Below, in pieces: positions 16,437 through 40,400 of a DNA stretch of 64,000 nt (the first letter of the stretch is position 1; every line of letters begins with the position of its first letter). Below the pieces are notes generated by a model that made no database searches, had not been told where the DNA came from, and saw only the letters and a program-made list of their open reading frames with translations. The position numbers were made by a program, and so were the translations under genes. The DNA is from Ascidiella aspersa. Its lineage: Eukaryota. The stretch is from NCBI GenBank assembly GCA_963924565.1, contig OZ004611.1, positions 21,328,001-21,392,000 of the forward strand, written 5' to 3'.

Positions 16437-18736
16437 ATGCGGGGATGTGTTATGGTACAAAGCATGGCACGAAAACCATTTCACAAAAGTGCAATTTCGC
16501 AAGAGCTACAAGACCTAACAGATGACAGGTTAGTAGCCAAATTAGATGCACATGAAAAATATATACAAATGCACAAATATTTTTTGCTTCTTTGTAAAAT
16601 ATCAACCGTAATGTTGAAAAAACAAGATAAACAACATGTAGGGTCTGATCTGCACTTTATGTAACTTGTCAAAAAGCTTATGTGTCCAACAAAACTATTT
16701 GCATTTAGGTGTGCAATCATGTTTGTTCGCATACCTGATGTTTGGATTTCTAGCAGAATTATATAAACCTTTTTTTGAATTTAGATGCGCAATGTACTAA
16801 TTCAGGTGTTTACACAAATTGATTTAACAATCTCTGAGGTCCACCAGCCACAGAATGCAGATTGGCCAGGGTCAAGATATAACTGAAAACTTAAAACATG
16901 ATAAATTTCAATATTTTTTCAAATGCAATCACTTTTTAACTCTTTGTTCTTGTAAAATTATTCACTTAATGAAAAGCAAAAATAACGTGTCTAAAGTTTG
17001 ACATTATTTTAACATTATCATATTTTCAGGTACAGAGATCTAAGGCGGCCTCGGATTGTTATGTTTTACAAGAATGGAGACAGGTGTGAAATTATTTTAA
17101 TTGTTTTTGTATGTTTGAGGGTTTTGCAGGCCATTAAAATAATAATTTTGTGGTTTGTAGAGTAAATTGTACAACTTTCGTTAACTGATTCGTGAAATTA
17201 TTTCTAAAAAATTATTGTTGCATAATTTTTAACTGTGCAATGTAAGGAAACCAAGTTGCAAAATATATCATAGTAACAGCAAATTCCAAACTAAACAAAA
17301 TGCATAGAGATTATGCCCAAAATAAATTATTTTAAAAAGTTTGTTTGTGGTATTTCAGATATTTCAAGGGTAAAACTTTGCATATCACTCCTCATCGTTA
17401 TCTGCACTATGAAGAACTTCTGTCAGATTTATCAAAATCGATGTCCCTGCCATACGGAGTAAGAAAAATATACACTCCAATAGGTATGTAAAATAGTAAG
17501 GTTAAGTAAATATGACCCTTTCAAAGAACTTATCTTTCTGATGACCTGTATTTTTTTTAAATAATTTCCAGTTTTTAACGAGATTTTCACAATACTTTTA
17601 ATTCTTTGATCCATTCTTTAAGTAATGGCCTAGTTTAAATTGTGATAATAGCAAAGTAAATCCAAATCTAATCATTTAGCTTTGTAGTGAAAAAAAAAGT
17701 ACAGGAATACTATAAATATTAACTATTTTTAATTATATTATTACAAAAAAGTATTATTTAGGTTTGTTACCATATTGACTTCTTTAACTTACTTTTTATC
17801 TTGAAAGCATTCTGCCACAAAATATATACTCCAGTAGCATACAGCTAACGAGGTTTGTTGGGCACTTAAGTTTGGTTTACAGATTTTCTGTTTGTTGTTT
17901 TGTGTTTTAATTGTAATTGTTTTAATTTGAACTGGAAACTGGCTACATATTTTATTATGAAAAACGGCTACCTATATATAAAATTTTTTTTTGCTATTTA
18001 CTATTTTTTTTTTAATATTTATGTTCTTAATTTTAAGTGGAAATAAGTTGTCACTGCATGGAATATTTTGCTCACATTTAAAATTGATTTTTATCGAATT
18101 ATCACTTCACTATTGATTTGTGTCAGCATGCTGTGATTAGTCGAAATGCATTGTTAAATTAAAACACAAAAACAAGTCAACAATATTTGCTTTTGTTTTT
18201 GTAAAATTATTAAATATAAAAGAAATAATAAGGAAAATTAATTTCATTATAACAGAGAGGCTAAGCTAAGGATACAAAACAATAGGCTCTTTTGGTTTAT
18301 TTTAGTGTGCAAGATGTATTGAAGTCAATTTTGAAATTTTTTAGTTTTGTTTTTTACCACTTTACATATTGTGCATTTATTTCCATTACATTGGTTTGTT
18401 TGTGAATTGATTTTTTTGGTATGATTTGGTTTTGACTATTTATTTCGTAACTATGTTTTAAAAAAAAACAACATATTTTATAAAAGAGTTGCGGAAAAGC
18501 TACTTATATATCTGTTTATTATATATGAAAACATGTAAGATACTCGGTGTAAACGTTTTGTGTAAAATCTGAATTGATTGGTTGTAATATTTTTTTTACT
18601 TACCTTTTGCATTACTTAGGTGGAACCCTCATTGAGGATATAGAAGAGTTGAAAGATGGAGAGTCATACGTTTGTGCATCATTCGAAAAGTTTCAAAGAA
18701 TAAAGTATGGAATGTACACAGAGCATGGACATTTGC
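16437..18736 (+). CDS. DCLK3: DCLK3-like 5' module A, N-terminal DCX domain; exons 16437-16528, 17030-17083, 17359-17483, 18620-18736
   Basis: Spliced product ...RRPRIVMFYKNGDRYFKGKTLHITPHRYLHYEELLSDLSKSMSLPYGVRKIYTPIGGTLIEDIEELKDGESYVCASFEKF, a canonical DCX signature (FYxNGDRYFKG, LPxGVRxIYT, GESYVCAS). It ends in phase 1 at a GTAAGT donor with no stop. The start ATG (16437, 16452 or 16464) is uncertain. Confidence 0.8.
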
Positions 18737-20829
18737 GTAAGTTGTAGTGTTAGCTTAGTGTTTAAAAGTTTCTCTTGAACTGACATTAAGCATTTTCAAA
18801 TCAACTGAATCTCCTGGAGTTCTTGATTCGTGCTTTCGATGGAATCTGTTCGCCAGAAAATGTTGTTGCTATGTCTTTCATTTTCAAAATAAACTTGTTT
18901 TAATTTATTTTTGAAAAAACCTTCGAGTGTGGGCAGAGTTTTCTGTCAAGCAAGTTGAAATCAACTTTTAATTTGTCATAGGGAATAAATTGAAAACTGT
19001 TTTTTACTTAGATGGAAACCAGTAATGTTTATATTCACTATAAGTTTGCATTATTCAGATTTATTGATCAGAAAACAGCAGAAAAAAATAAAATGTCTGA
19101 AAACAGTATCACGTTTTTTTTTTAAATCGAGTTAAACTGGATTTAAAACTCATCTATATTGTGACATCATATATATTTTTCAGAACTTTTTAAAATTCTG
19201 TAGCTTTCATATCTTGACTTTATAGGATTTGTAATAACCTTTCCAATTCTCCTCCGAGTCGAGTTTGTTGGAAATGTGAATTAGTTTATTCAGCCAAACA
19301 AACGCTATCAATTTATTGCGATTACGTTACTGTTTTAGTTGTCGAAACAAGGCAGGCGTTTTTAACCGGAGGCAGCGTGTTTTCACTGTTAAAAGGAATT
19401 CAGAAATATGTCAGTCATAAAGCGTTTCTTTCCAGCTCGAAAAGGCGAAAGCATAACGCCACCGCAGAAGATAGACGCGTAGACCCTTGCGCTTGTAGCA
19501 TTGTGCCACGTCCCCTCAATTGGCACAAGACAATGGCTCAAGTGGCCATTCAACCACCGCCCATCTGGTCTATTATGGCACCGCTCAGGCCAAAGCCTGG
19601 ACATCGCCTTATTAAAACGAGTGATCTTGACTGTTGGGCTGTGCAAGCACTTTGCGAGCTGATATGGTGAAGGCTTGCACGATTTATCGCCTTTTTGTCG
19701 ACAATTGTTCTTGGAAATGCTGGCAAACAAAACCTGTATTTTCTATATTACACCTTCGAAAAATAACTTTTCTAAAAGTTTTGTTTGAAATTTATTTTTT
19801 ATTATCTTACTTCACTGTACTATCGCGGGTCGTGGCTTTTTTTTACATTTTTTTAAACGCAACACTTCGTATAAGCTGATATGTGAGAAAAATAGCTCGA
19901 TTGAATCAATGAATTGCACACAAAGGTCTCCTGTGTGGCTAAACGGAGCAGTCTTGAGGGGGCCATAAGCGTACATTTTTTAAAATATTAGCGAGGTGCC
20001 ACATTGTGTTGATAGTCCACCACTCATGAAAAGGCTGAGAACCACTATCATACACCTTTATATATTTACATATATATATTGTTTTAAGAGCAATACTAGT
20101 TTTCATACTAAATCACACTACATCCAATTAGGCACTCTTATTCTGCGCAATCACACACTTTGATACCAACGACTTGCATTTTAATTTTCTAATAATCTCC
20201 AGTCACAGAAAAGCTAGATCATGGTTGTTCAGACGGACTAGATCACAGTTGTTAAACACATGTGTATGTGTATCTTTTAATCTAAAATCTCCTTGTAGGT
20301 CATCAGCTCAGTGTAATATTTTTTACCAAGGTTGGAAAACCAAGTTATGCCGATTTTGCTTGATCGTGATTATAACAACTTATTTAAAGGTTAGGCCGGC
20401 TGTTCAACGACAGGCGAATACGAAAGGCGCTCGGCTCTTGTAAACCGCCGTAAATTGTCAGTGTATAGAATAGATAAACAGCATTCACCTACGCAAGGAA
20501 AAAATCTCGTTGTTTTGTATATTTGCTGTGGCCGTTAAATCGCAACACTTAGTACGGCTGTCGCCAAAATTAAACGCCAGTTTACTTGCTTGGTTTTGTC
20601 GATTACGTTTGTCGAGTTGTACCAAAGGCCAAGTATTCATTTCTAATTCTTTTAAAGTTTGTATTATAGAATAGATGAATGACATTCACCTACGCAAGGG
20701 AAAAATCTCGTGGTTTTGTATATTTGCTGTGACCGTTAAATCGCAAAACTTACTACGGCTGTCGCCAGAAATCCAAACGCCAGCCTTTTAACAGCGAGCG
20801 GTCATCACCTTGTTGTTTTTGCTAGCCGC

Positions 20830-20843
20830 GTTGCCATAGCGAC
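20830..20843. promoter_or_regulatory. RFX X-box-like motif
   Basis: GTTGCCATAGCGAC, near-palindromic match to GTTGCCATGGCAAC. Confidence 0.5.
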
Positions 20844-22306
20844 CGGTCTCGCCCTGAATCAGGCCCTTGTCCGTGTGCTACGTCATCACAACTTATGGCG
20901 AGGGGATTAGCCCACGTCAAGTGTCCCGTCCAATTTTATTGTAGCCGTTTTCGAGGGCTCGATTTCCATTGTTTCACTTCGGCGTATTGCACACAAGGCG
21001 GAGAATAGACTCCAGACATCCGACGTTGTCCGGGTCTTGTCGCCGAACTTGGCTTTCGATTACTTTTGGCTCATGAAATTGACTCTAACACTACCTTCTG
21101 TTTGAATTTACTATATGCTGTTGATTTTTGCCTAAAGATCGACACTACATTTCATCTAAGTTCAACCCTAAAAATCCAATGTTTTTTTAACTTCCTATAT
21201 CCTTCACAGGTATTTTTATATTTATTGACGGTTAAATGTTTTTGAAATCTGTTGGGGTTCTTGTAAATAGGTTTTCTCGGTTTTTATACCCTCATTTTAT
21301 GTTAAAAAAACATATTTGTATGTAAAGTATTTAAACTAGGGTTTCTTAAGTGACCTGTTCAGACCCATATAGGAGGCCCACGATTACTTGATATTTCAGT
21401 TAATAAACAGTCTAACACAAAATTACTATTTTTAAATACGACTTCAGAGACCTCTAAATTGCAACATTCCGTGACGCATTAAAAGGGGGACGCTAATTAT
21501 AAAAGCATGAGGACCACTGCATGAACCTTCACTTTCGGGCGTCGCCAATTTATACAAGCATGCGCCCTAATTGACAGCACATAAACTTAACACGGAAAAT
21601 AAAGTTTAAACGTCTGTTGTTTTAGCATCCGATTGGTATGTTTTAAACGGGTAGCCTTTATTTAAAACGAAAAAAAAAATTGTGAAATGCGTAACAACTA
21701 GGGTTTACGAGGAACATAATTATGCTACTGAAAAAATCTCTTCTTAAAAATATTCTTTTCGTCTTATAAAATCTATGACTCGTTGGACATGCATCTACTT
21801 CTTTACCCAAATGCATTCTGGTCGGAAATTTCTTATTTATTTCTTTGCTGGAATTTTTTTGATCCCTTAACAACAATGTTCTTGTGTTTCAAGGAGGTCC
21901 TAAAATAATAAGCTGCTCATGGCAGCATAATGGACATTGTTTCTCTTTTAGAAAGTAGTTAAATATATAATCCACTGAAAAGGTCCTATACGTTGATAAT
22001 TAATTTCGTGTATAAAAAAAACAAAATAAGCAAAACACTCGCCCGCTAATACGCACAATTTTAGGGCGAGTATCGCGAAAAGCTGCACATGTCCACAATC
22101 GAACTCGCGCCGCAGAAAAAGCAGCGCAAAGTTTACAAAAGCAAACCCGATAAGCGGATCGCCTTGGCGCACAATGGCGCCGAAAATCGCGCATAAACCG
22201 AACCAACAGTGGACTGAGCTTAGGGTCGGGCGGCGTTGCTCTTCAATGTACTGTTGAGTGGCCCTCTCTCCATGCCCCGTGGCCAATGACGGTCAGAATT
22301 TTTTTT

Positions 22307-22321
22307 GTTGCCACGGGCGAC
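22307..22321. promoter_or_regulatory. RFX X-box-like motif
   Basis: GTTGCCACGGGCGAC in a CpG-rich patch. Confidence 0.4.
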
Positions 22322-24364
22322 GCGTTGGCTTGGCATGGCGCGTAGTACGAGCGTTATCGAAATATCTTGTTTTCGTTGCAGTATTTATTCGCCGGCTAGT
22401 TATCGTGGCGCATTTTTACCTTATGTAAATTCATATGGAGTTTTTTTGGTTCTTGAGTCCGCCTACCCCTGAAACAAACGGGTACTTGCTTGGTTTTCTC
22501 CATTACGTTTGTCGGGCTGTACCAAAGTCCTGGTATTCGTTTCCAATTCTTTAAAAGTTAAAAATAATCCCCTTTTTGTGGTTAAAATGTGCGCTTATGT
22601 TCTTAAACTTTTCCTTCAGGTTGAATCGTTTTGAATTCCTCGAAGTGTATTTTCATGTGTGTATGTAAAGCGAAATTTTGGCGTAAATAGTTGCAATTGA
22701 TTCAAATTGTCATAAGCGTAGAGGTGCTGAACAAAAAAGCTAAAATCAGAGTCTATTTCACGCTGGTCAGGTAAGTTTGGCCCATATTGGCCTAAACGAT
22801 CATAATAGGTTTTAGGCGATGCTATCGCGCTATATTGGCACCTTCGACAAGCGACCGAAAGTCCGTAAAATCTGATTTTTGTTGCCGTGACTGCCCAGCT
22901 TTTGCCGTTTTGTCGTGTATTTACAAGGGTCGATAATAGCGATGTTTTCTCCGATGACAAAAGGTTATCGCTCTGACCACTCATTCTTGTGGGAATGAGA
23001 CTTTAATTGTCCTCCGTGTTTAAAGTAGTATTGCCATCTCATATTGCAATCTCCAAGAGTCATTAAAATATATATAATTGCAAACAAAAGTGTCGTCGAA
23101 TTTGCTTAGGTAAAAATTTTTAATTTTATTTGAATTATCTTCATTATGTTTGCTGCATCTATTTAAAATCAATAAAACTCACTACACAATGATTTGTTCA
23201 AGGTGTATTGTTCTTATGTGTTATCTTCCACAGAAAATCAACTTCAACTCGTTAAACAATGTTTAAGTTGTCTTTATATTGTGGACAAGCACGCTTTTGA
23301 AAACAACTTTTCTGATAACCAGGAATGTTTATCATTCGAGTCACAACACGATATGGTGCTCGGCATATTAACGGAATATGCGCGATTGTCAATTGGCAGC
23401 CTGTTGAAATGTTAAGGTTATTGGACTTTTCAAATTTATCGCTACCCCGTTGAGTGGCCACTTAGGTCTGAATCGCTATTCGTCAAACTTCAATATTAAT
23501 TAGGCGATTGCTCGAAGTTAAGAATCGCTTTGCTTATGCTCTTCAGCGCCACCCACTGGGGTATTTGTTTCTGTGAGCATTGGATGCTCCGTTGTTCGAT
23601 AGACGCCCCAGCCATGCGTGACAGCCTCCCTTATTGATTTATTTATATATACTTTTTTTCAATTAGACCTTGATAAATTAATGGAACAACGACCACAATG
23701 CAATTACTCTTCCATCGACTTGCATAAAAATTCTCATCTATACTTGTTTTACAGACCAGAATGAGTATCTGCACAAAGATAGATTTGTGTTTACCCTCTT
23801 ACCTTATTTGTTTTCGATCTCTCACGATAAGATTTTGCAGCGAATTTTAATAGACAAAAACAGCACAAATTATGTTTTGACTTTAGGGTCTTTTCTACGT
23901 CTTTAACTTACATCTTTCAGACTCGAAAGTTTCCTTGGTTTGTTCATATATGGTTAAAAAGCTCTCTTTCGTTTTGTCAACTCTTAGTTGACTGAAGAAG
24001 TTTCAACAAAAGCCTTGGTCAGGGAACATTAAACCACGTCCTTCGGTTAAATTTTTCCGGCCTGAGGCATTATTTTTAAATGATCCCTAAATACGGTTAT
24101 AACCACTTTATATGACGAAATGTTCAAACTTTGCTGAAATATGTTAAAATTTGACACTAAACGACAATTTCATATCGCCTACTGTCAATCTTAATTTTAT
24201 TTTCTTGCTTTGTTGTGAAATAATCAAGTCATATAAGGTTAAGACAAATTTTTATATTCGGCCCGCTATCTGCAAATATTTACAGTTATCCGGCCCGCGA
24301 CCGCCATTCCTTGCGGTAGTCCGGCCTTTAATGAAAAATGTTTGATGACCGCTGACCTTTAGGC

Positions 24365-24621
24365 CAGTTCTTCTTAAACTTTTTTAGTTTTGTTCACCCC
24401 TAGCATCTATCTTCAGATTTCATTTACCCTTGTCTCATGATATGATAAAACTATCTCGTCTATATTTCACTGAACAGGTTGAACACCCGGAATATCCGCC
24501 CTGCTCGCAAGCTATCATTCATTTCTGAATGTTCACCCTTATTCACCCCTTTTGGTTGGTTCACCCCTGCAAAAATTTTATCGACCCCGGGGTGAACCAT
24601 TTATCTGATTAAGAAACGCTG
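24365..24621. mobile_element. hAT-like MITE
   Basis: cagttcttcttaa ... ttaagaaacgctg termini; 8-bp TSD ctttaggc/ctttaggt; repeated ttcacccc motifs. Confidence 0.7.
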
Positions 24622-26561
24622 CTTTAGGTTATTGTTTTTGCTTTTTCAGTTACAAAATATTCGTTTTGAACTTTGTGATGGCTTCCAATTAAAAAAGGCT
24701 GGTATTCGACATGTCCTTAAATTTGGAAATCTGACCAGGGCCGTCAAAGCCAACAACTTAACCCCGCAAGCCTACAGTATCACCGCCAGTTATCCAACCA
24801 TGCAGTTTAAAGCCCCTTTCACTGATTTTTCTCCTTGTTATCTTTAAGAACGTGACGATCGCCCTCTCGACTTGAAGTGTTGTCTACTCTGGCTGCAATC
24901 CATTACAGGTGCTTTGGCGTCCGACCTGTTAATACTGGTTAATGTTCGACCAGAGAGAATCTTCCGTTTTTTATGCCGTCTAACTCTCACAACGCCCGGC
25001 GCGATTACTTCGTGGCGTGTCTCGAATACGCGTCGCTCGACTGGTACCTACGGCCGAGGTGCTGTGCAAATAAATGAGCCTATATGCGCAAATGTCAGCC
25101 TTTAATGTGTCTTCGCGTACAACAATTCAATTGTGTCTTGGCAACCGCCCTATCAGTTCACTGGCGATGGGTAGCGTCTCTGCCTTAAATGAGCGGTAAA
25201 ACTGGTGTCAGTTAGCTTTTTAATGAGCATTGAAATCTCAGTAATTTCTAGCCTTTCGTTTCTGATATTTGCTTAGCCTTACGTTGCTGCATCGCTCTTT
25301 TGAAGAATAGGCCATTGTTCTTTCACCACAAAGCAGAGTATAGCAGATTTATAAATTCTGACTTATGGTTTGGTTAGACTTATGAAAGAATATACAGATC
25401 CGCAAGAATACTAAACCAACCCCCGAAAGTTTATTCAAAGTGACAGACATTACTGTATTAAGGTAAGGTAGTTTTCGAGGACAATTTACAGTAAGGCTTA
25501 AGTTCAGAATACAAAATAAATTTATATTTTACCTTAAATTAAGAGGGAGAAGGAGACATAATTTCAGAGCAGAAGGTATAGTTTAAAAACATTTTTGTAA
25601 CTCAGGAATACGTACTGTTTAGATCAGCCGGCAAGGTAGACGAAGTGTACGCTTGTTCGTTTCTCCAAGTCTATTCAATTTCAATTACATTTCTGGTGGC
25701 GCCAGCCACATCAAAAGGGCAACCACAACTGAATACTGCCCAATATTTACCGTGATGGACTGATGGTGTTATGGATACCTGAATACCGCGACGGCCGATG
25801 ATAAATTATGCAGGCGCGTGGCCTAATGATGGGTTCCAAATAAAATCACCTTTGTCAGAAGTGCGGGCAACCGTAAAGAAAGTATTACGCTGCCGCCTTC
25901 GATGAAATGTCATTTTCTTGACGCGCGCATCTATACTTGGCCTTATCGTTGCTAACTGCTAAGGTGTACATGTTTTAGTTACCAGCAAGCGGGTGTTCAG
26001 TTAGCAGGGCTAATCAAGGTAGCATTAGCTTCATGTACACGAAAAACAGTATAGCGTTTGAAAAATCGACGTAGTATTTTGTTAATGAAAAGTGTCAGTC
26101 ACGAGTGATTTGTGGTAGAGTTATGTTAAATTTTAGTTTATAACAAAAGTGAACGAATATCACGCCGAAAAATTACAAAGGTAGTAAAATGATATTATAC
26201 AGTAATCAAAATAAGAAGTATACAGATAACTTTTTTGAGGTTTTGAATGCTATAAAAAAGATCAAAAGATAAGCATAAATGCTATACAGAAAAATGCACT
26301 ACTGTGTATTGCCGATACATATAGGACATAGGTGATCATTAATTACGCCGAGTTGTTGCAATTGCAGTGGTTTTTGATTTGCCTAAAACAAACAGTGCTT
26401 AAAAAAGAACCAGCTACTGCCCCCCAATGTTCAATACTCTGCGTCTAATTTCGACCTGTTTAAATTTAACCAGGCAATAAAATAGGAAATCGATTAAACG
26501 ACAAAGGGCGATGCGAAAGTGAAAGGAAAACAGTATGTCGACGTGATAGCAATCAACCTCA

Positions 26562-26715
26562 ATGGCTGACCTGGCCTCCAGCCTGTTTCCGCACATGAAC
26601 GAACTCCCAAAGGCGGTTCACCTCGGCACCATTAAAAAGAAGGCGGCGGTCGTCCGACAGCGAAGATTCGACCGGAACAAGGTGGAATCTAAAATCCGCG
26701 CCAAACCGATCAATG
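26562..26715 (+). CDS. Candidate alternative first coding exon B of the DCLK3-like gene (51 codons)
   Basis: ATG with an upstream in-frame TAG; GC-rich exon-like codon usage; ends AATG|GTAAGA, phase 1, in frame with acceptor 37441. Confidence 0.6.
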
Positions 26716-27475: not shown

Positions 27476-30391
27476 GGAGCGGCCCGAGAAACCGCTTTCT
27501 TGTTTCGCACCGAAGGCGCCCGACCCTCGACCACATGTTTCTACAAGCGACCGCGGTTTGTTAGCCTTGTTCAAAGGCGGCCGTGTTGTGTTTTTAGGCA
27601 ATTTTAGTGCGAAATGTCGCTGTCTGCGTCAGCGGGCTTTTGTCGCCCGCCGCGCCGCCGTCGCTGTACAAACCGTTTAGATCCGCGAGCAAATAAATCT
27701 TCTTCCCGACGATTTTGTCTCTTGTAGATGTTTTTTTGCAAAATGTATTCCCTTTGTATATTTTTAGTGTTGTGTAGACGTGGATTAGTGGCGTCTGAAC
27801 ACCTTAGCTTTAATGCTTTCGTTTGATGCGGTTTTTGAGTCTCGAATCGCCACTGCATTTCCGAAACTTTATAAATAACCGTCTTTACTCGCGTTCGGCG
27901 TTTCCGCGTGATGGTGATAGAGAGCAACTGGAAACGCTCTGTATTGTTTTATCATGCCCCGATTTATCGTAATTATGTTAGATTGAACCCAATAAAAAGC
28001 AATAGCAATAGTTCCTTATAAAAGTTTTCTGTGGTGTAACTACATTCTAGGATTTCTCGTTATTTGATTTGTTCTGGGTGTTTTGATTCATAAACGATCC
28101 AATGACTGACGGTTACTCTATTACACGTTGTATCACTCGAAATTTGTTGATGTGTCTAAAATAATATAGATTCATTTTAGCTTTTAAATATGCATGGTTC
28201 AGTGAGGCCAATGTTAGCCATCGCGTTCACAGCATTTTGTAGTTTGTTGCGTCCTTGTGTCTACCGAAAAATCTGATGGTACAAACTGTGCACTGGCTTT
28301 TCAAACTGTGCACTGACGACAAACCTAAACGTGTTTTTATATGTGAGTATTTAACATGCCTAACAGTAAAACACAAATCTGCTATTTTGGATGATTCTAG
28401 CTATTACAATACAGGTTAGGCATTTCATTTTACAACGCTGTCGCGTAAATTCGATTAAATCCCGATAAATTTCTCCCCCGATTGAAATGAAAACTTTAAA
28501 TCCCGTTTAAAGGACAGCGTTTTGCCGAAGGATTATATGAAAGAAATGACCTTCGCGCGTAAATGCGCGCTGTTACAAGTGTTCCACTTTGCTCATGTGC
28601 ATTGTGTGGCTTCGGCGCGAATCGCGAAATCCGAATGCACAAAAGACACCAAAAACAACAATCCTGACACTTTCACGTCGCCGGCGCCATTGTTACGTCA
28701 CGGGCCCTCCATTGTGACATCGTGCGGACGCGATGTAGATCGTCATCGCAAGACTTTCGATTTTGCCAGTGTCCGACAATTGATCTGGAAAACTTTCTCT
28801 TTCAGCGAATGATCTCGCTTTAACCGGGTTTTGGAAATTTGTCGAGTGGACCGGAGAACAATGCGTTCAAGCCGCAGTTAAGAGCTCATCGAATACTGTA
28901 GCGCTGTTGCCCGACGTAGTGGTAGGCAGCTGCTGATGTTGCATGCTGGTGAAAATTACTGCTTTCTCAGTCGTTTATACCAAGTTAGCCGTTGTGTTTA
29001 CCTGCTGTATAGTTTAACTGTTTGTTTCGGGCAGTTAGACCCTTTGACACTTTAGCTAAGATAAAACAGGCGGTAAAGAGGTCTATGCCTTTTTGTTGTA
29101 GTATTGCTTTTGACAGGCTGGTAATTACAGTTAATTTATCCATAACAGATCCAATTTTGTGCTACTATTTTCAGCGAATTGATAAGAACATAGGAAAACA
29201 TCCTCGTATAATTGTATAGCAAGTAATATCGACGCTAAACATTGACCTTGCGGCGTTTGTTTTAATACATCTTAAGTTTAGACCGTATAGGACGTTATCA
29301 GCGATATTCTGTAACATTTTTAGAAAGTAGCCAATTATGACATGAAGTCGTTTCGTAAGATATCATCACGCTTTGCTTTGCTCTTCTAGACCTTTCGCTT
29401 TAGGTTTTTGCAATCCATTATTTCTCACGAGTTAAGATGCGCGCTAGGTAGCGCCATCGTGTCGCGTCACCGGTGACGTACCACCCCTCTAGTTACGTCA
29501 CAATGCCTGTTTACTTGGAGTCGGTCGACGGCGAAGAGGACTCGCCGTGGCTGTGCAAGAAGTACATTTGGGGAAGAGTTAGTAAGTGAAAACTTTACTT
29601 TTATGTGTGTTATGATTGCGAACGCCGCAATGACTTTTATACTATGTCTTGTTGTTGCAATTCTTTTTGGCGGGCCTTCAACCAATCTGCATCTTGTATT
29701 TAAAAATCTCAAATGTGTTCGACCACCCAAAGAACGCCCACGTGAAGTTGGAAAACGGGCTTATTTAATTTTATAAGCTCAAAGCTTTAACCAAACTTGT
29801 CTATTTTACTTATTTAATTTTTTTTAGTGCTTTGTTTTATGCAAAAGTACTCTTAGTTTAAGTTGTAATCTAAACATTTGACATAATGTGGAATCACCTC
29901 AGTTCAGTTGAAGCTGTTTTATTCTTAACTAAGATTGTGATGTCCGTATATTGCACACCGAAATATGTTTCAGATATTTCTCAATTTAGGAATATCAGTT
30001 TTTTTATGAGCTCTATATTCTAGAGGTCATACTCACTGTTTATTGTAGGAAGTGCACTGTAATAGTAATAAAAGTAGATATAAAAAACGTTGGTTTCTTC
30101 AGAAAATTTGTTTGTATTTTGCCTGTCTTGAAAGAGCTAAAAATGCCGTGGCCTGTAGCGTATAAACTATTCCTCTGTTGTATTAAGCATTTCCTATTAA
30201 GAATCGCTGGAATAAATTATATGCAACATCAACGTTACTAATTGCACTTGATATTGGAGTGGCCATTGTGCCCCTATCCCGAGGGTTGTGATGTTCCGTT
30301 CCATCTTGTTTTAAGTGGCGTTTCGCGATGAAATTGGATTGCCTATTTGTGTAGGTTTAGTTTGATATTTGCTTTGGGCGTGCTGTTCAGC

Positions 30392-30422
30392 ATGCAATTT
30401 GGATATTATTACAGGAGAAAAG
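30392..30422 (+). CDS. Candidate alternative first coding micro-exon C (MQFGYYYRRK)
   Basis: ATG followed after 10 codons by a consensus donor AAAG|GTAAGT in phase 1. It is short enough to arise by chance. Confidence 0.4.
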
Positions 30423-31631: not shown

Positions 31632-33222
31632 ATGGAATGGAAAAGTAGAGGCTACTCACAACCCGGCTTTCATGTCAAGCCTCAGTGGAACCAGTACGTC
31701 CCGCGCGCATGCCGACCGGTGACCTTGCTGTTGACCGACACGCATCGCTGCTGCCTGGCCTGCGACGTCATCAAACGCAGGAAGGCTCGCGTTTCGGAAA
31801 TTACGCAAGGCGACTCGAGGCGATTCGTAAAGAAGGGTCTCTCTAAGCAGAACTCAAAACGCGCCGAATCCAAAAAAGATTTTGTTGATTTTCACGTTTT
31901 GGGGTCGGGTAAGAATGTGCCTTGCTGTTCGGAAGCCTCTTACGCAACTACAAGCAGCGATGGAGACGACGCTTTGACTGGCAAATATTCAAAATCGATC
32001 AGAAGCATGCGCGGGCCTTTGGTAGAACAGCGTCGTCATTCGACGGACTTGAGAAACATTTACAAACTAAATCAAGCATCACGCATAAGTCCAAATGACG
32101 ACGGAGATTTTGCACGGCCGAACGCGCATCGGCAATATAATACACCTTGCTACTTGAACAGTTGCCCGACTGATGTTTCGTGTCACCGGCAAGAAACTTT
32201 GCTGCAACCTTTAAATCCGCAGTTCGAAAGGTTCGGAACCGGTTTGAGCCGGATTCGGGAGGAATCCCTGGGCGTCGACGTCACCGCGTATGAGCGAGAC
32301 AAAACTTTTGCGGATAGTTTTGGCAAAAAGATCGCTACGATCGGAAAAGAATCAACCTCAACTATTGCAAAAACCCGTTTAAAGCGACAAACAAAGAAAA
32401 GCCAACGAGTTCAAAAAAACGAATGGGATTCTTCGACGGCGACAGAAATGGGATTTTTTACGAGAAAGCAAAAGTACGAATCGCGTTTAAATAACGGCCC
32501 CAAAACGGGATACAACGAAGCGATTAAAGAGTCAAGCACGCTATCTAGCGGGACTAATAAAGCAGGCAAATTGGCCACGCGCGGTCGCCGCCGAGCCAGC
32601 TCTATTAGGCGTAAACCGCTCGCGTCCAAAATGTCGCCGACCTTTCGAAAACCAGCCGCGCTTGGCAAGAGACGAAGCAGAAGCCTTGTTGTCCCGAAAC
32701 TGAACCGGAACTCTGGGGTTTTAGCGGAAAAGTGCGATATGAATCCCGATAAAAGCGTCACGCCCGAAAGCTGTCGTCGTTTGGACCGCACCGGCAACCT
32801 ACGGCCAAACGAAATGGAAGCGACCAACGGAAAACACCTTTTCAACCGTAATCTGCATAACAACGCCGACGTGTTTTCGGGCTGCCGCTGCGACAATCAC
32901 GCAGTGGGATTTTTGGACCCCGCCCCCCGTCACGGTATGACGCACGTCACAGGAACGCAATACCCCTATGTGCGCGAACCCACGTCGATCGGTGGCCGTG
33001 ATCGTTTGCTGCGTTTTTCCGATCGCTATTTTTCGCCGCTGGCGTCTTTTGCCCGAAAACCGGAACAAAACACGCCGAAGTTTGAGCCCGTTTGCGCCGA
33101 TTCGTTTTCACGATGTCCGGATGGCGGATATTTCGCTCCAGCGGGCGTGACCGGACCCCGACCACCCCCATTTCACCCCAACGGAATCGCGTTTCGGCCC
33201 GCTCCCGGCCAAGAGAGAAGAG
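31632..33222 (+). CDS. Candidate alternative first coding exon D (530 codons, basic and low-complexity)
   Basis: 539-aa ORF with an upstream in-frame TAA; donor AGAG|GTAACG in phase 1 shortly before the ORF stop; no recognisable domain. Confidence 0.65.
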
Positions 33223-33613
33223 GTAACGTATATATAGAGATAAAGATATAGCGCTCGTGCGGATTTGAGGTCTTTGCCGCAGATTTGTTTTGTGTTACGC
33301 CTAAAATAGGGTAGCGGTTTACATTTTTTTTTCTGAAACAGTTCACCTGGATTTGGCGACAATTGCCTTACGTTTTGTACGCTTGTAGGCTTAGCAAAAA
33401 TATATGAAAAAGTTTTACGTTGGGCCGTTTTGTAGAAAAAGTTGCAATCTGAAAATGTTGAGTTGAATTACAGCAATGAAACTGCGCTGGTCGATACGAC
33501 TTTAATGTATGCGTCTGCGAAGTTGAGTTAAAATTTTGTGAAGAATGTGAAGGGCAATTGCCCATAGGTTAGGACTTTTATTCATTTCACGCAAACCGTG
33601 CCATCCTCTAAAG

Positions 33614-33930
33614 CAGTGTTACTCAAACTTTTTTTGCTGCGACTCAAATAATAAGCGTAAGTATGACAGCGAAGTTTAGGCGACTTAATTATCATCCTGA
33701 AACTTTAGGTAAGCTTAAAGTAAACAAAACACAAATAAGACATTGGCATGAAAACTTTTCAATTTATTGAGTACCAGTCGCGTCTTCGTTTTGCTTTCAA
33801 ATTTGAATTTTGTTTAATTCTTTGAACCAATTATATCTAATCTTACAATGTGAACTACTGCAGTCGGCGCCCCAACTCAAACAAACAGCAACCTATTGTT
33901 GTATCACGACCCATGGGTTGAGAAATACTT
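33614..33930. mobile_element. hAT-like MITE
   Basis: cagtgttactcaaac ... gttgagaaatact termini; degenerate TSD (ctctaaag/tcctaaaa). Confidence 0.55.
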
Positions 33931-34479
33931 TCCTAAAACAACAATCGAACTTGGTTAAGTATAGTGTCAATTCAATAATGGGAATTAGAATGCCAAATTA
34001 AGAAAGCGTAACGTTCGACGGCCGCTTAAGCGATCGTAACTCGCACAGAACAGTTTCAACGAGCGTTAAGCCCCTGAAAAATCCCCTACAGTGGCGATAT
34101 CCCTTCGCACCCCTTTGTCCATCGAAAACGCGCTCGGAACAACACCTCTCCCCGTTTCTCCCATATTCTCCAGGCATCTGAGCACGACAGCACGCGTTTG
34201 CGGGCGCGCGATGGAAACAACTTGCTCTTCGGACAAACGATCCGGCACCTGCCCCACTCGAGGTTTCATTAGCGCCACTTTGCCGATGCTGGGCGAAGCT
34301 CTAAGCACCCTTAACGTGTCAACCGCCAGAGCGATATTGCTTCATATTACGGGGGAAAATCGATTTTCTTCCTACCAGGCTTGGTCGTTAGTATAGTTAC
34401 TAGCGCGTTTGATATCCGGGTTTCTGTCATCGGCGATATTTACAAATTATTGCGATCGCCGCTGCTCGATTTGAGTTTC

Positions 34480-34519
34480 GTTGCTAGGGTGACTCGATAA
34501 TTGCCGTTGCTATGGCGAT
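34480..34519. promoter_or_regulatory. Tandem RFX X-box-like motifs upstream of exon E
   Basis: GTTGCTAGGGTGAC (34480-34493) and GTTGCTATGGCGAT (34506-34519), about 400 bp before ATG 34916. Confidence 0.5.
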
Positions 34520-34915
34520 ACAAATTCGCCTTTTGATTTGGTTTCCAGTCGTTGTCAGTCGAGCTACCGCCTATAACTGCACGAGGCTAGTTTGGGATAG
34601 TGTGTCAAATTTAAACCCAACGGTTACTATTTTTAAGATAGATATGTAGTTAAGAAAGTTTTGGACAGAATCGTACTTTGCGAATATTAAGTTCAATTTC
34701 GGTTAGGCGATTTACCTTTGACAGGTGTATAAGTCTATTCTCTCGTATTACTCACATGGCTAAGATGGTTGTTATTAATCCAACTAAAAGCCGATCTGTT
34801 GTTATTGTTGTTGTTGTTATTGTTCTTCGTTAGAATTTGAGATTTTGTTTAATTGAACCTTGCAATGTCTTTAAGATGGTAGTTTTAAGTGAGCAAATTC
34901 AGCATACTCGAGTAA

Positions 34916-36530
34916 ATGGTGTCAGACAAAGCACGACAAGCCGTTCAAATGTCAGAAAATCAAGATTTTCAAACCGAAAGTTTGAACAACGACTTGAATA
35001 CAAATTCGGATACCGGCAGCAGCGTTGCTTTGCCAACCTTTACAATGGTCAAGTCAAAACAACGAATCAAGTTGAAAACGGTCCCAAAAACGACCCCCAT
35101 TACCCCCAAGCAGGACGTGGTGCCCCCACTTGACCTCACTGCAATGCAAAACGTAACCCCAAAAGGAAAGTTGGACTCTCAACGGCCGACGGTGATAAAA
35201 AGCGAAAATAAACCAGTCGTTGTGCCGGTATCATTGCACAGCAACCGCGTCAACGAAATTCGCGTCACCACCGTAAAAACACCGGCTAAAAACGCCAGGA
35301 ACGTAGGGAGCACGCCCTTGAATCACGTCAGGAGTGAGCGGCGGCCTGTAAGCGTTTCCGCCGTCGATCCTAACGAAACCGAAAACGGACCCGCCACGTC
35401 ACCGCCAGAATACTGTGACGTCGCCATCGCGTCGTCGAAATTTCGCGGCGCTCTTTCGTCATCATCCAGGTACTGTGACGTCACCGATTCGTACGTACTC
35501 GGCGACGGCGCGGCGGCACCGATGGCGGAAAGTCGCGACGCAGAAAACCAAAACGACAGCGACGAACAACCGGCGGAGCGTGAGAACCCGGAGCCGGAAG
35601 TGACGCACCACCCGGAAGTGATCAAGTCGCGCTCGTCGCGTCGCTTCCTGTTTAGTTCGAGTGGAAGCAAGGAAGCAAAGGTGGCCGACAACAAGCAGAA
35701 AGCGCCCTTGGTAAAGACGAGTAGCGACCCGGGCGCGAAAGCCTCGGAACGCGGCGGGGTTCGATCCGAGGACGACTTCGCCTTTTTTCGGAAGCGCGCC
35801 TTTTTCAGCGTTAGCGGCACGGCCGAGGATTTCGAGGAGCTGCAACCTACCTTCGTGTCGGTGCAGAGCGACCCGCAGTCGACCGCCGTAAAGCCGCGCC
35901 ACCTTGACAAGCGCGCAAACACTCACGCCTCCACCGCTTCTTCTTCTTCTTCTTCTGGATCCAGCGCGCCGCGGACGCTGCGTCCGAGTCCCTACCAGCA
36001 AAAACTCGCCGACGCATCCTCGAAGCGGCGCGTCGCTCTTAACGCCGAGCAGACGAGGCCGGGCGTTCAAAAAAGCCAAGCGAAATCGGGGCGCAAAAGG
36101 CTGCCCACCGTTCCGGCGCCGGTTAAGCCTAGAGTTGTTGCCCCGCGGCGTCGACGCTCCCTTAGCACGGCGGCGGCTCCGGCTGCGTCGACGCCCAAGC
36201 GCGTTCAGCTGAAGTCCTTTGTGCTTCTGAACGACGCCGACGCAGCGCTGGTGAGCGAACGCGCCAGCTGCCAAATCGAGAAGCTACAGGCGTCGTTTTT
36301 GCAGAAGCGACAGGTCGAACGGGACTCGGGCGAAGATTTTGAGTTTGTTTTTCCGAGGGGAGAGCACCCTCCCGCCGTTGGCGCAAGAATCAGGGGCGGT
36401 GGCCTGAGCTCGCGCGCTCTTGCGGCCGAATCGCGCCGCGGGCGCTTTCTGGCCGACGAGAACGGTCGTTTGCTGCAAGGCACCGACGACGTTAGTGGCA
36501 CGAACGGGGAGGATTTGGAGTATATCCACG
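34916..36530 (+). CDS. Candidate alternative first coding exon E (538 codons, S/P/A/R-rich, probably disordered)
   Basis: TAA immediately precedes the ATG; GC-rich open frame; donor CACG|GTGAGA in phase 1, after which the ORF turns intron-like (T-rich). Confidence 0.75.
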
Positions 36531-37440
36531 GTGAGACTTTTGCCCCGCTTTTGCGACTGATCGGAACGTGTGTCGACGTTGTTTTTTGTTTGGTTGAGAT
36601 TCGGCGTTCACAGAAAAACCTACTGATCACGCTGCCAATTGTCAGAAACTATTTGCTTGCTTGTGTCGCGCTGGACGTGTTATTACATACATTACGTAGA
36701 GGAACTTGAAGACTTTTTCTTCGCGGCGTGTATTTAAAATTTGCCGTTTTGTGACTACCCTTGCAAATAGCAAATAACCAAAATACCCTCCATGAACAAG
36801 GAGAGGGTTTTGGCTTAGAGTTTGCCTTAAAGGATTAGGAATATAGCTTCCTTCAGACCATTGGTCGCAACCCGCTACTATTTAAAATTCAATACATTAT
36901 CGGTTGTTTATGTTTCCAGACGTGGCTGCATAAAAAAACAAAATACTAATGTTTTAACGTGTAATTGTTAAACATAAGTTTAAAGTATTTCCGAAAGTAA
37001 GGTTAATAAAATGACTCAAAACAGGCTTTAGTTTGTCAGAATATTTAATTACACATCCGCCTACTTTTGATAAATTTTTTTTTTTTGGCTGATTTTTTTG
37101 CTGATCGGGCGAACTTTGCGCAACTGCTGACTAGCCCGGGTAGTAAATAACACTGGATGGCCATACTCGTGTTGAATCTTGACCTTGAGTGGAGGTTGTT
37201 ATAGGAAATTACGGGATTTTAAAGGAAGTTATGGCCCTAAAAAACACGAACCAATGATTTATCTAAGCAGCCAAACAATATATATATTATACTGTTGGTC
37301 TTTATCTGTTTTACAAAACTCAGCTAATACTGTTCTAAACTCAGAACTTAGTCAATGTTTTGGTCGATGAAGGTCTCATACGGTACTTGGAAGTTTTTTC
37401 ATCTTGTCATTTCAATCTTAAGATGCCATTTACTTTGCAG

Positions 37441-40400
37441 GGCAACGGATACCCAACTACAACGGCTCGCACGGCGCCTACTTCGAGCAGGAAACCGGGG
37501 TTTACCCCAACACGAGCACCGGAACCGGAAGGAACGGACTGCGCTCCACGTTTCCCCCCAGCGGACGCGCCGCCTTTGGCAAGGTAAGCTCAGTTTAGCT
37601 TATCTTTATAGCGTTTCGAATGGTTAGTATTGTTGATTGTTGTGTTTTTGCATGGAATTCATAGCTTTGCAAAGTTAAGTTTGCAGAGCTCCCTGAAGAA
37701 GTACACAACACTTTTAAAATGCTATTTCCATATCTTACCTACCTCATTTCTTTACGTTGCGTGTTTTCCGTAACCCAAACTGATATAAACATTGAGTTAA
37801 CTACTAAAACAGGGATGTCCAACATTTTATTATAGTGGGCCGCATTGACACTTGAAATAATTTAATGGGCCGCAGAACCTATTACGTTTCAAGAAAAAGT
37901 ATTGCTCTTTAAGAGTTATAACGGGCCTTTAGAGTTATATATAGTTTTTTACCCATACTATACTATTAGTGCGCCCCTAAAAGCTGACTGGAACATTTTA
38001 ATTAAGCTAATATTGAACGTTTAAAATACTACTTGGAAATGAAAATGACTAGCGGGCCGCACAAAACTTTCAGACGGGCCCCAATGTGGCCCGCGGGCCG
38101 CAGGTTGGACATCCCTGTACTAAAACGAAGCCGCCCTAAACGGGATTTTAAAATCTAAAAAAAAGTCCTGATTAGGCCGACTGATTTCGAATATCTTTCA
38201 CGAAGGTATCATGTGTGATGATTTACACTACGAATTTGTTTTAGCAATTATGCAAAATTCAAGATTTTTGATATTAAAATGTATAACAGTGTTCCCCTTG
38301 AACTGCGATTTTGCTCTTTAAAGACATATATCCATCGAGTTTACCTCAACATATACATGCATACCCTTTACTTTTTGTTATTCCAATTAACTTTTTTGCT
38401 CGATCTTAAGTAATGTATACAAGTGACTTAACCTGCTCTATAAAGTCACTTTCACTTCCAAAAGTGACTTGATTGGGTAAAAATAATTTATCTTTTAAAA
38501 ATGGCTTTGTAACACTGGTTAAAGTCCAGCGTTATGTGCGCTTACCAAATGATTTACGAGTTTTTATCCCAGCACCGGCCAATGACGTTCGGGACAGCCC
38601 CTCGGGCCGACTACGCCCACACGACCCACTCGGACAACTCACCCATGAAGCCCAAGGTGGTCACGGTGGTCAGGGCCGGGCCGACCAGGCCACGAAAGAA
38701 AATCACGATCCTGCTCAATCGTCGAGCGGTCAGTCTTTGTTATTTTGGGTATTTTTTGTTATGTTTAGGGTTTTTATATATTTTATGTTTATAGATTGGT
38801 ATAACAATATATTTGTATGAAACTTATGTTGGTTAAGCAATTCTTATTAAGTATGTTGGTTTTTGCGAAATTCTACTAACAAATTTTAACTGACTTGAAT
38901 CAACAGACTGTTTTTTGAAAGTAGCTATATAGCGCATTCAACTGAATATTGTTGAAAACATCTTATAGAAATTTACAGTTTTTTCAAAAATATTAAATTT
39001 AAGAAATTTACTTTCAAATTTTATGATACTTAGATTCAAATGCACCATTTGTTTGTGTGTGGTCTTCTCGTGTTAAGTGATTAGGTGCATATGTGTTCCA
39101 GTATCGTATATCTAAAATGGATTTTTCGCGCAGGTGCAAACCTACGAACAGCTGGTGGCCGACATTTCCGAAGCGCTGGGACAACCCAAGTGGAAAAACG
39201 ACCACATTCGCAAGTAAGGCCCCCGTAGAAAAAAACAATAGGCATCGGTGGCATAATGCAAAAATATACCGGTAAAAACGGTTGCTGCTCAGCTCTTGTT
39301 AAGGCAGTGTTTCCTAATCTTTTTTCACGGCGACCAAAGTACACGTAAATATAACATCGAAGCTTTTGCGACACAATTCTATTTATTTATCTTTTTATGA
39401 GTAGCAAAAAAAACACAAGACAAATAGCATTAATAAATTCGAATAGAGCCATGTCTTCGTATTTTTCCCCAAAGTTTATTAAAATTTTCAAGAAATCTTG
39501 CTCTGGTCGGATATCAATAAATCTAACCTTGTGAAGTCGGCGACACATAGGTTAACACACCATGTGGTAAAGCAACAGAATAAAACTGATCTGTATTCTT
39601 AAGTCCTAGTTCAGGGATGGCAAACCACTGTCCCGCTTCATGTAAGGATAAATAAAGAAAAACAGTTCTTCGTTAGATAGCCTAGCATACTGTCAGGGCT
39701 CAGGGCTGGCAAATCTGTGGGTAAAAGTGTTTTAGGGTTGACGAGTATAGGCCTACACTAACTGCACTTCAACAAATGCGTGCAGAAAAGCAGACAAGTA
39801 AAATCATTTTGCTTATCTCTGTAAAACGTAAAGGGTGGCGATCCTTTACGGAAAATTAATATAGTTCTTAGACTAAAAGTTCTAAAAACCCTGGTTAAAC
39901 CAATAAACCATACTGAAAAGCTTTCTGCTGAACTTCTGTAATCCCATAAAAATGCTGCAGCATTTGTTAGCTATTTAGCTTCTTAACATTTGTGGGAATC
40001 CGAATTTGGAAATCATCCAAATACCTTGAATATCCAACGCAGACAATAACACTTAAAACGACGCAGCAGCAAAGCTTGACATAATACTAACATATAGATA
40101 AATATATGACCCACTTGTGCATTTTGTAAGGATCAAGATCGTGTTTGTGACCCGCACGATGAAAAGGTTCGCCATCCCTGTCCTAGTTAAACATCTTTCT
40201 ACTTTGTTTCGCAGACTGTACACTCTGAAAGGGCGGGAGGTGCGATCCGTGTCCGACTTTTTTCGAGAGGACGACGTCTTCATCGCAGTCGGAAGAGAGC
40301 AACTGACCACGATGGACGTGCAGGTAATTGCCATGTTAATATTATAACTTTTACAGTTGACAATATGTTCTGGAAAACGAAACCATCGAGGAATTCAGTT

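What the first reader, a model, noticed from the sequence alone, without database searches (positions are those of the whole stretch)
16437..37583. DCLK3-like kinase with a cassette of at least five alternative N-termini feeding one constant region
Seen in the sequence: between the DCX-encoding module A and the constant acceptor at 37441 lie four more ATG-initiated segments, each with an upstream in-frame stop. All five end at GT donors in the same phase, +1 (coding lengths 388, 154, 31, 1591 and 1615 nt, all 3n+1), which is the phase the 37441 exon needs. The two large intronic 'orphan' ORFs (539 and 597 aa) are thereby explained as giant first exons. Known: variable-first-exon plus constant-region architecture occurs in clustered protocadherins, UGT1 and plectin, and DCLK1 uses alternative promoters. 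Inference: this kinase swaps N-termini (an extra DCX domain, short basic peptides, or ~530-aa disordered arms) by promoter choice. I am not aware of this being described for DCLK3.
Basis: partly seen in the sequence, partly recalled or inferred. Interest (0 to 1): 0.8.

Follow-up and report, generated by a model that had tools for sequence, protein, structure and literature searches.

The report
Conserved coding segments inside DCLK intron

Summary

The gene is not DCLK3-like. Module A encodes DCX1, and the "constant region" encodes a second DCX domain plus the kinase, which is the DCLK1/2 architecture.

RNA contigs (run X3) confirm only the A4(18736)->37441 junction. No D or E junction was seen. 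E is transcribed through its proposed donor at unchanged depth, and cover stops just after an AATAAA.

A syntenic locus from a second species, taken from metagenome contigs, changes the picture:
- ORFs D and E are both conserved, single-copy coding sequences.
- E's similarity ends at a phase-1 donor present in both species.
- D has a conserved phase-1 donor at 31908.
- C shows no conservation. B is not covered by the second-species locus. About as many such segments are expected by chance.

Verdict: partly supported. The likeliest reading (about 0.5) is internal-promoter 5' exons (mini-exon, D, E) that remove DCX1, with E also made as an unspliced mRNA. The main rival (about 0.33) is that D and E are nested orphan genes. 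This is a new variant of a known kind, of moderate interest.

The parts
16437..16528 (+). Exon A1, the start codon of the canonical long isoform
   Evidence: ATG with an upstream in-frame stop at 16302; donor CAG|gttagt
17030..17083 (+). Exon A2, start of DCX1 (IVMFYKNGDR)
   Evidence: Acceptor ttttcag and donor CAG|gtgtga; translation
17359..17483 (+). Exon A3, middle of DCX1
   Evidence: Pfam DCX PF03607, E 1.1e-8, profile positions 2-36
18620..18736 (+). Exon A4, end of DCX1, with a phase-1 donor
   Evidence: Pfam DCX, E 1.4e-6, profile positions 36-60. Its last 30 nt are joined to 37441 in an RNA contig of run X3
29503..29581 (+).
   Evidence: 71% DNA identity over 121 nt with second-species L004:1304-1424 in otherwise unalignable intron. 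ATG, upstream stop and phase-1 GTAAGT are present in both species. 9 synonymous and 6 conservative codon changes
31632..33251 (+). ORF D (539 aa), a single-copy coding sequence predicted to be disordered. Residues 16-60 are conserved.
   Evidence: The homologous 869-aa ORF is at L004:5273-7882, 58% identical over 45 aa. Polymorphisms are 9 synonymous to 12 nonsynonymous, against 77% nonsynonymous expected. No RNA cover in X3; two reads in X4
31632..31908 (+). 'D-short': the conserved N-terminal part of D, up to a conserved internal phase-1 donor (GG|gtaaga), 277 nt
   Evidence: Donor score 4.7 here; the counterpart at L004:5597 (AG|gtgaga) scores 6.7 and is also phase 1. The two align at the invariant G93
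34916..36530 (+). Segment E (538 codons + 1 nt), ending at a conserved phase-1 donor ACG|gtgaga
   Evidence: One homologue cluster among 1.84 billion representative proteins (P0001, E 1e-17), colinear over residues 40-537. Similarity stops at EDLEYIH|G versus EDVEYI|G, and both species have a GT[AG]AG donor there. Transcribed in X3
36531..36709 (+). Read-through tail of ORF E: 59 codons, hydrophobic, not conserved
   Evidence: GC falls from 0.585 to 0.453. Alignment shows no conservation. Most of it is removed by a heterozygous 409-bp deletion, 36574-36982, in DNA run X1. It stays open in both species, P about 0.04 and 0.08, and X3 RNA covers it at depth 6.19 against 6.28 upstream
37005..37010 (+). 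AATAAA, a candidate intronic poly(A) signal for an unspliced E transcript
   Evidence: Apart from one inside E at 35207, the only AATAAA between 33000 and 37600. X3 cover ends at 37022 and is zero from there to 37440
37441..37583 (+). Common linker exon with a phase-1 acceptor
   Evidence: An X3 contig runs A4 | 37441-37583 | 38573. 59% identical to L004:12518-12664, which has a phase-1 acceptor ttctcag|
38573..38740 (+). First exon of the second DCX domain; the 3' end is approximate
   Evidence: Joined to 37583 in the X3 contig. 91% identical to the second species
39131..39217 (+). Conserved block between the DCX2 exons, probably the middle DCX2 exon
   Evidence: 85% DNA identity over 87 nt with the second species. 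Exon borders were not determined
40207..40329 (+). End of the second DCX domain; exon borders approximate
   Evidence: Pfam DCX, E 2.1e-6, profile positions 29-59. 85% identical to the second species
45700..50194 (+). Kinase-domain exons (about 45700-45850, 46339-46470, 47010-47170, 47820-47940, 48790-48990 and 49967-50194)
   Evidence: Pfam Pkinase hits cover profile positions 1-263 piecewise. The closest solved chains are DCLK1

Best explanation
The locus is a canonical doublecortin-like kinase gene of the two-DCX (DCLK1/2, zyg-8) type. Its order is DCX1 (exons A1-A4), an 18.7-kb intron, a linker exon at 37441, DCX2, a charged coiled-coil-like region, then the kinase.

The long intron holds three evolutionarily conserved coding segments that start at an ATG: a 79-nt mini-exon (29503-29581), ORF D and ORF E. 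Each carries a GT donor in phase 1, conserved in a second species, that fits the phase-1 acceptor of the linker exon.

My best reading is that internal promoters in this intron make isoforms that lack DCX1 but keep DCX2 and the kinase. Their front ends would be a 26-aa peptide, the conserved 92-aa head of D (or the long D arm), or the 538-aa disordered E arm. E, and perhaps D, is in addition expressed as an unspliced RNA that ends at an intronic poly(A) signal and would encode a stand-alone disordered protein.

Shown: the gene architecture, the A->37441 splice, conservation and single-copy status of D and E, the conserved donors, and unspliced E RNA.

Inferred: that the mini-exon, D and E are spliced to 37441, and that they have their own promoters.
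For: - Two DCX domains and the kinase: Pfam on single exons and DCLK1 as the best solved relative.
- A4->37441->38573 joined in one RNA contig.
- D and E are single copy in the 308-Mb genome.
- E has exactly one homologue cluster, colinear over about 500 residues.
- The second species keeps the same order: mini-exon, D, E, linker exon, DCX2, kinase.
- Between the two species only these three blocks of the intron can be aligned at all.
- Mini-exon: ATG, upstream stop and phase-1 GTAAGT in both species; 9 synonymous and 6 conservative codon changes; the junction codon with the linker exon is Arg in both (AGG and CGA).
- E: similarity ends at G|GT[AG]AG in phase 1 in both species. After that the composition changes and nothing is conserved. 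A natural 409-bp deletion removes most of the tail and the stop but spares the donor.
- D: a strong phase-1 donor is aligned in both species at G93.
- Precedent: mammalian DCLK1 uses two promoters and an intronic terminal exon (CARP) (PMC6134793).
Against: - No junction from D or E to 37441 was seen in any run.
- The X3 contig passes from A4 into 37441 without a branch.
- X3 depth is the same on both sides of E's donor (6.28 against 6.19). Cover ends at 37022, 12 nt after the AATAAA at 37005-37010. This is what an independent unspliced mRNA would give.
- E's tail stays open for 59 and 57 codons in the two species (P about 0.04 and 0.08).
- D stays open for 446 and 760 codons beyond its conserved donor, so it must also be translated unspliced or from a later donor.
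- The comparison rests on only one other species.
- The mini-exon, B and C could not be tested with reads. The single read-laying run was limited to 31600-37590, and the only raw RNA run gave 6 reads there.
Confidence: 0.5

Rival explanations
1. D and E are independent, lineage-restricted, single-exon genes nested in the DCLK intron on the same strand. Each encodes a disordered protein, and the phase-1 donors are ordinary Gly-Lys / Gly-Glu codons. The mini-exon is then either the only alternative first exon of DCLK or belongs to something else.
For: - Each is a complete ORF with its own ATG and stop.
- E RNA runs through the donor at equal depth and stops after an AATAAA.
- No junction to 37441 was seen.
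- E's tail is open in both species, joint P about 0.003.
- D stays open far beyond its conserved donor.
- Donors inside ORFs can only be phase 0 or 1, so phase agreement is weak evidence.
Against: - Donor motifs sit at aligned positions in both species, and for E exactly where similarity ends. I estimate the chance at about 1% for each, from donor-site densities.
- E's tail is not conserved, has intron-like composition and is largely deleted in a natural allele.
- The second species has no canonical AATAAA between E and the linker exon.
- DNA contigs also break near 37012-37019, so the RNA end at 37022 may be an assembly artefact.
- The 26-codon mini-exon cannot be a gene on its own. It shows that internal 5' exons exist in this intron.
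Confidence: 0.33
2. One reading: five alternative first exons (A, B, C, D ending at 33222, E ending at 36530), each with its own promoter and each spliced to 37441.
For: All five have an ATG, an upstream stop, a GT donor and a length of 3n+1. C has a consensus donor AAG|gtaagt. The A junction is confirmed.
Against: - C is not conserved in the covered part of the second species, and B gives no match there, although its counterpart may lie beyond the fetched 10 kb.
- About as many such segments arise by chance.
- D's donor at 33222 is weak and lies in a stretch with about 5% haplotype divergence and 10 nonsynonymous to 4 synonymous changes.
- No D or E junctions were seen.
Confidence: 0.05
3. 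D and E are internal cassette exons (phase 1-1) included between A4 and 37441, not first exons.
For: If an in-phase acceptor lay near their 5' ends, both would be symmetric phase 1-1 exons, so inclusion would keep the frame (arithmetic).
Against: - In-frame stops lie 1-3 codons upstream of both ATGs, and the second species also has ATGs with upstream stops at the same places.
- There is no polypyrimidine/AG acceptor in the right phase inside the first codons.
- The RNA contig joins A4 directly to 37441.
Confidence: 0.04
4. D and E are decaying remnants (pseudogenes or transposon ORFs) with no present function.
For: There are no Pfam, Atlas or database relatives beyond one species. The 3' part of D looks neutral.
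Against: - Both are single copy.
- The ORFs are intact in two diverged species whose introns no longer align.
- No frame-breaking indels occur in the other haplotypes (table 4).
- There is an excess of synonymous changes in the 5' half of D.
Confidence: 0.03

Closest known systems
Mammalian DCLK1 locus (two promoters; full-length, DCL, CPG16/short and CARP/Ania-4 isoforms; PMC6134793, PMC10602587)
   Same: It is the same kinase family. It uses an internal promoter giving N-terminally different isoforms, and a transcript (CARP) that starts inside the gene and ends at an intronic terminal exon. That resembles the unspliced, apparently polyadenylated E RNA.
   Different: In DCLK1 the internal promoter lies after both DCX domains, so short forms lack both. 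Here the candidate 5' exons lie between DCX1 and DCX2 and would leave one DCX domain. DCLK1 has no counterpart of 0.5-kb to 1.6-kb coding first exons for disordered arms. Splicing of the candidates is not shown here.
Invertebrate DCLK1/2-type genes (C. elegans zyg-8, Drosophila CG17528, Nematostella NvDclk1/2; PMC11193195, PMC10602587)
   Same: They have two N-terminal DCX domains followed by a CAMK-type kinase with a short C-terminal tail.
   Different: I found no description of conserved ATG-started coding segments inside the DCX1-DCX2 intron (paper searches). Orthology was not tested by a tree.
Variable-first-exon clusters (clustered protocadherins, UGT1A)
   Same: Several 5' coding exons, some large, lie upstream of one shared acceptor and all end in the same phase.
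   Different: Exons in those clusters are tandem paralogues of one another. D, E and the mini-exon share no detectable similarity, there are at most three or four, and use of the common acceptor is shown only for A.
Same-strand nested intronic genes
   Same: D and E have complete ORFs. E gives an unspliced RNA that ends near an AATAAA inside the host intron.
   Different: The donors are conserved and phase-matched at the ends of the conserved coding parts, and the tail after E's donor is not conserved.

Membership tests
DCLK family (doublecortin-like kinases) | N-terminal DCX (doublecortin) domain(s) | tested here: met
   Pfam PF03607 hits on exons 17336-17488 and 18553-18744 (DCX1) and on 40102-40344 (DCX2)
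DCLK family (doublecortin-like kinases) | C-terminal CAMK-type Ser/Thr kinase domain closest to DCLK | tested here: met
   Pkinase hits cover the whole profile over six exons. The best solved chains are DCLK1, E 1e-23 for one exon
DCLK family (doublecortin-like kinases) | DCX and kinase parts on one transcript | tested here: inconclusive
   An RNA contig joins A4, 37441-37583 and 38573. The link onward to the kinase rests on strand, order and synteny with the second species.
DCLK3 subfamily | Predominantly a single DCX domain (PMC10602587, PMC11193195) | tested here: not met
   Two separate DCX domains were found
DCLK3 subfamily | Groups with the DCLK3 clade in a kinase-domain tree | not tested
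   No tree was built.
Variable-first-exon / constant-region gene (protocadherin, UGT1A type) | Each variable exon is spliced to the same constant acceptor | tested here: inconclusive
   Seen for A only.
Variable-first-exon / constant-region gene (protocadherin, UGT1A type) | Variable exons are paralogues arisen by tandem duplication | tested here: not met
   D against E by BLASTP gave a best E of 0.49. The mini-exon is unrelated to either
Variable-first-exon / constant-region gene (protocadherin, UGT1A type) | Each variable exon has its own promoter | not testable with these tools
   No CAGE or 5'-end data. CpG observed/expected is about 1 or more over the whole intron, so it does not mark promoters
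Variable-first-exon / constant-region gene (protocadherin, UGT1A type) | Donor phase matches the constant acceptor, and this is conserved | tested here: met
   Phase-1 donors occur in both species for the mini-exon, D (31908 / L004:5597) and E (36530 / L004:11531), with phase-1 acceptors in both
Nested independent gene (for D and E) | Complete ORF under coding constraint | tested here: met
   ORFs are kept in two species. They are intact in other haplotypes and show a synonymous excess in the 5' half of D
Nested independent gene (for D and E) | Own unspliced or separately spliced transcript that ends before the host's next exon | tested here: inconclusive
   E: X3 contigs cover 33240-37022, read through the donor and end 12 nt after the AATAAA. 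DNA contigs also break there, and contigs cannot show ends or strand. D: no cover in X3

The most novel reading that the evidence does not exclude
A two-DCX doublecortin-like kinase replaces its first microtubule-binding DCX domain, by promoter choice inside the DCX1-DCX2 intron, with lineage-specific front ends: a 26-aa peptide, a 92-aa conserved motif, or disordered arms of about 530 aa. The two giant 5' exons would be dual-use: spliced they extend the kinase, and unspliced and polyadenylated they encode stand-alone disordered proteins.
Probability: 0.3. Interest if true: 0.6.

Novelty: new variant of a known kind. Interest (0 to 1): 0.4.

Why it matters
If the mini-exon, D and E are spliced to the linker exon, the gene would make kinases with one DCX domain instead of two, attached to very different and fast-evolving disordered arms. 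The two DCX domains have distinct roles on microtubules (abstract of PMC7726794), so such isoforms should bind microtubules differently and could be targeted elsewhere. It would also be a clear case of young, lineage-restricted coding sequence recruited as 5' exons of an old gene. If instead D and E are nested orphan genes, the locus is ordinary and mainly warns gene annotators: phase-compatible ORFs in an intron are not sufficient evidence for alternative first exons.

Tried and rejected
- Pfam on D, E, B, the mini-exon and their conserved parts: nothing significant.
- Word searches for E, D and the second species' D head: only self hits.
- ESM Atlas for D and E: no usable hit.
- D against E: not related.
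- My idea that E's conserved C-terminal part (KSFVLLND...EDLEYI) is a divergent DCX or ubiquitin-like fold. AlphaFold2 on the two-sequence alignment gave pLDDT 50 and pTM 0.21, with one long helix and no DCX-like fold, so I dropped it and did no fold search.
- The X3 loose end at 33962 looked like a splice. It is only a polymorphic stretch of the same place.
- Transposon origin of D and E: rejected, both are single copy.
- Internal-cassette reading: rejected for lack of acceptors.
- CpG observed/expected as a promoter marker: uninformative.
All searches were exon by exon, by reference.
- The 5,991-letter stretch 31600-37590 was chosen, so junctions of B, C and the mini-exon could only have shown up as loose ends at 37441, and only A's did.


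Full report
**1. What is in the sequence**

The window is G000:C5:21328001-21392000 of a 308-Mb animal genome.
- Module A consists of four exons: 16437-16528, 17030-17083, 17359-17483 and 18620-18736. Together they are 388 nt.
- B is 26562-26715, C is 30392-30422, D is 31632-33222 and E is 34916-36530.
- Each of these starts at an ATG preceded by an in-frame stop, ends before GT, and is 3n+1 long.
- The exon at 37441-37583 needs phase 1.

**2. What the gene is**

Pfam scans of single exons place one DCX domain in A3 and A4, and a second DCX domain in the exons at 38573, 39131 and 40207. Six further exons between about 45700 and 50194 cover the whole protein-kinase profile. Their best solved relatives are DCLK1 chains.

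Two DCX domains are typical of the Dclk1/2 subgroup, while most DCLK3 proteins have one (PMC10602587, PMC11193195). So the gene has the canonical long DCLK architecture. Module A is DCX1, not an "extra" domain. I did not build a tree, so orthology is not settled.

**3. RNA evidence (one stretch allowed, 31600-37590)**

- Runs X1 and X2 behave as genomic DNA of other individuals, with even cover and many SNPs.
- Run X3 behaves as RNA. One contig carries 120 letters before 37441 whose end is identical to the last 30 nt of A4 (18707-18736). The same contig carries 255 letters after 37583 that begin the exon at 38573. The A4->37441->38573 splices are therefore real.
- No contig or read joins 33222 or 36530 to 37441.
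- X3 does not cover D (31600-33200). It covers 33240-37022 patchily.
- X3 contigs cross E's proposed donor. Contig 36111-36550 has depth 6.28, contig 36552-36712 has depth 6.19 and contig 36851-37022 has depth 3.5. Cover is zero from there to 37440.
- An AATAAA lies at 37005-37010. This is what an unspliced, polyadenylated E transcript would give. DNA contigs also break at 37012-37019, so the end point may partly be an assembly effect.
- The raw RNA run X4 gave only six reads over D, the spacer and E. All had the same orientation.
- X1 carries a heterozygous 409-bp deletion (36574-36982). It removes most of ORF E's tail and its stop, but spares the donor and the AATAAA.

**4. D and E are real coding sequences**

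- Each is single copy in the genome. They are unrelated to each other and have no Pfam family.
- A full HMMER pass over 1.84 billion representative proteins found one relative of E (P0001, E 1e-17). It is colinear over residues 40-537 at 30-38% identity.
- The locus is syntenic. After the E homologue come the linker exon (59% identical), the DCX2 exons (85-91%), later exons and the start of the kinase (74%).
- About 4.7 kb upstream of the E homologue lies an 869-codon ORF. Its residues 27-70 match D residues 16-60 at 58% identity.
- Apart from three blocks, the intron of the two species cannot be aligned at all. Any retained protein similarity therefore implies selection.
- In haplotype X1, D shows 9 synonymous and 12 nonsynonymous changes, against 77% nonsynonymous expected. 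The split is 5:2 in the 5' half and 4:10 in the last 250 nt, where divergence is about 5%.

**5.

The third conserved block is 29482-29601. It holds an ATG at 29503, 26 codons and one further base, then GTAAGT.

The second species has the same structure at L004:1326-1404. It has its own upstream stop, 9 synonymous and 6 conservative codon differences, and a phase-1 GTAAGT. Joined to the linker exon, the split codon is Arg in both species (AGG and CGA).

A 26-codon ORF ending in a conserved donor cannot be a gene of its own. The only conserved phase-1 acceptor downstream is 37441. This is the strongest, though indirect, evidence that the intron contains an alternative 5' coding exon.

**6. The donors**

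- E: similarity ends at EDLEYIH|G in this species and EDVEYI|G in the other. Both have G|GT[AG]AG in phase 1 at that point.
- After the donor, GC falls from 0.585 to 0.453, the peptide turns hydrophobic and nothing is conserved.
- Against this, the tail stays open for 59 and 57 codons. Shuffling gives P of 0.04 and 0.08.
- A stronger phase-1 donor at 31908 (GG|gtaaga) aligns with L004:5597 (AG|gtgaga) at the invariant G93. The ORFs continue for 446 and 760 codons beyond it, so the long form must also be translated.
- A caveat on phase: GT[AG]AG in phase 2 would create an in-frame TAA or TGA. Donors inside ORFs can only be phase 0 or 1, so agreement in phase is worth about one in two, not one in three.

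**7. B and C**

With a simple donor matrix, the intron outside D and E has 29 donor-like sites. Nine of them close an ATG-opened phase-1 segment. Markov simulations give about four such segments per twenty sites.

C shows no conservation. B gave no match, but its counterpart may lie beyond the 10 kb fetched. I treat both as chance until RNA says otherwise.

**8. Reading**

- Best (0.5): internal-promoter 5' exons (mini-exon, D, E) feeding 37441 and removing DCX1. E would also be expressed as an unspliced, intronically polyadenylated mRNA. This is reminiscent of the two promoters and the CARP transcript of mammalian DCLK1 (PMC6134793).
- Main rival (0.33): D and E are nested, same-strand orphan genes, and only the mini-exon is an alternative first exon.
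- Internal cassette exons: 0.04.
- Decaying remnants: 0.03.

**9. Limits**

- There is only one comparison species.
- Contigs cannot show transcript ends, strand or rare isoforms.
Every search was exon by exon, by reference.
- An AlphaFold2 model of E's conserved C-terminal part was of low confidence (pLDDT 50) and gave no fold assignment.
- Atlas searches gave nothing.
- The earlier notes of this scan did not bear on this finding.

Noticed in passing
window 701-2263 (-): An intronless 521-aa ORF with poly(A) polymerase / CCA-adding enzyme head and RNA-binding domains (PF01743, E 4e-33; PF12627). It looks like a TRNT1-like tRNA nucleotidyltransferase gene in a single exon.
   Followed up: no
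window 8072-8470 (+) and 9323-9850 (-): A CBM21 starch/glycogen-binding module (E 8e-13), as in protein phosphatase 1 glycogen-targeting subunits. Next to it on the other strand is an Arf-family small GTPase ORF (E 2.5e-20).
   Followed up: no
window 36574-36982: A heterozygous 409-bp deletion, with one G inserted, in DNA run X1. It removes most of ORF E's tail and its stop codon but keeps the donor at 36530 and the AATAAA at 37005. The deleted allele would end the ORF after ...GTCVKYFRK.
   Followed up: partly
window 32945-33260: The 3' end of ORF D is hypervariable. Haplotypes differ by about 5%, with 10 nonsynonymous to 4 synonymous changes, against about 1% in the 5' half of D.
   Followed up: partly
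window 15500-19000 versus 19000-39000: CpG observed/expected is 0.33-0.74 over the DCX1 exons but about 0.9-1.7 from 19000 onward. This suggests a boundary between a germline-methylated and an unmethylated domain inside the gene.
   Followed up: no
window 18737-37440 (+): Donor-like GT sites are about half as frequent in the real intron as in Markov simulations of it (11 against about 20 at score 2.4 or more). This fits selection against cryptic donors on the sense strand.
   Followed up: no
window 41419-41901, 43118-43447, 44038-44211 (+): Exons between DCX2 and the kinase encode long Arg/Glu/Lys-rich stretches that look like coiled coils ([15 protein letters not shown]...). They are partly conserved in the second species and have no Pfam family.
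   Followed up: no
window 54000-58700 (+): Gypsy-type reverse transcriptase / RNase H remnants (PF17917, E 6e-20) lie downstream of the kinase gene. They fall within the region that other notes of this scan describe as a foldback element.
   Followed up: no
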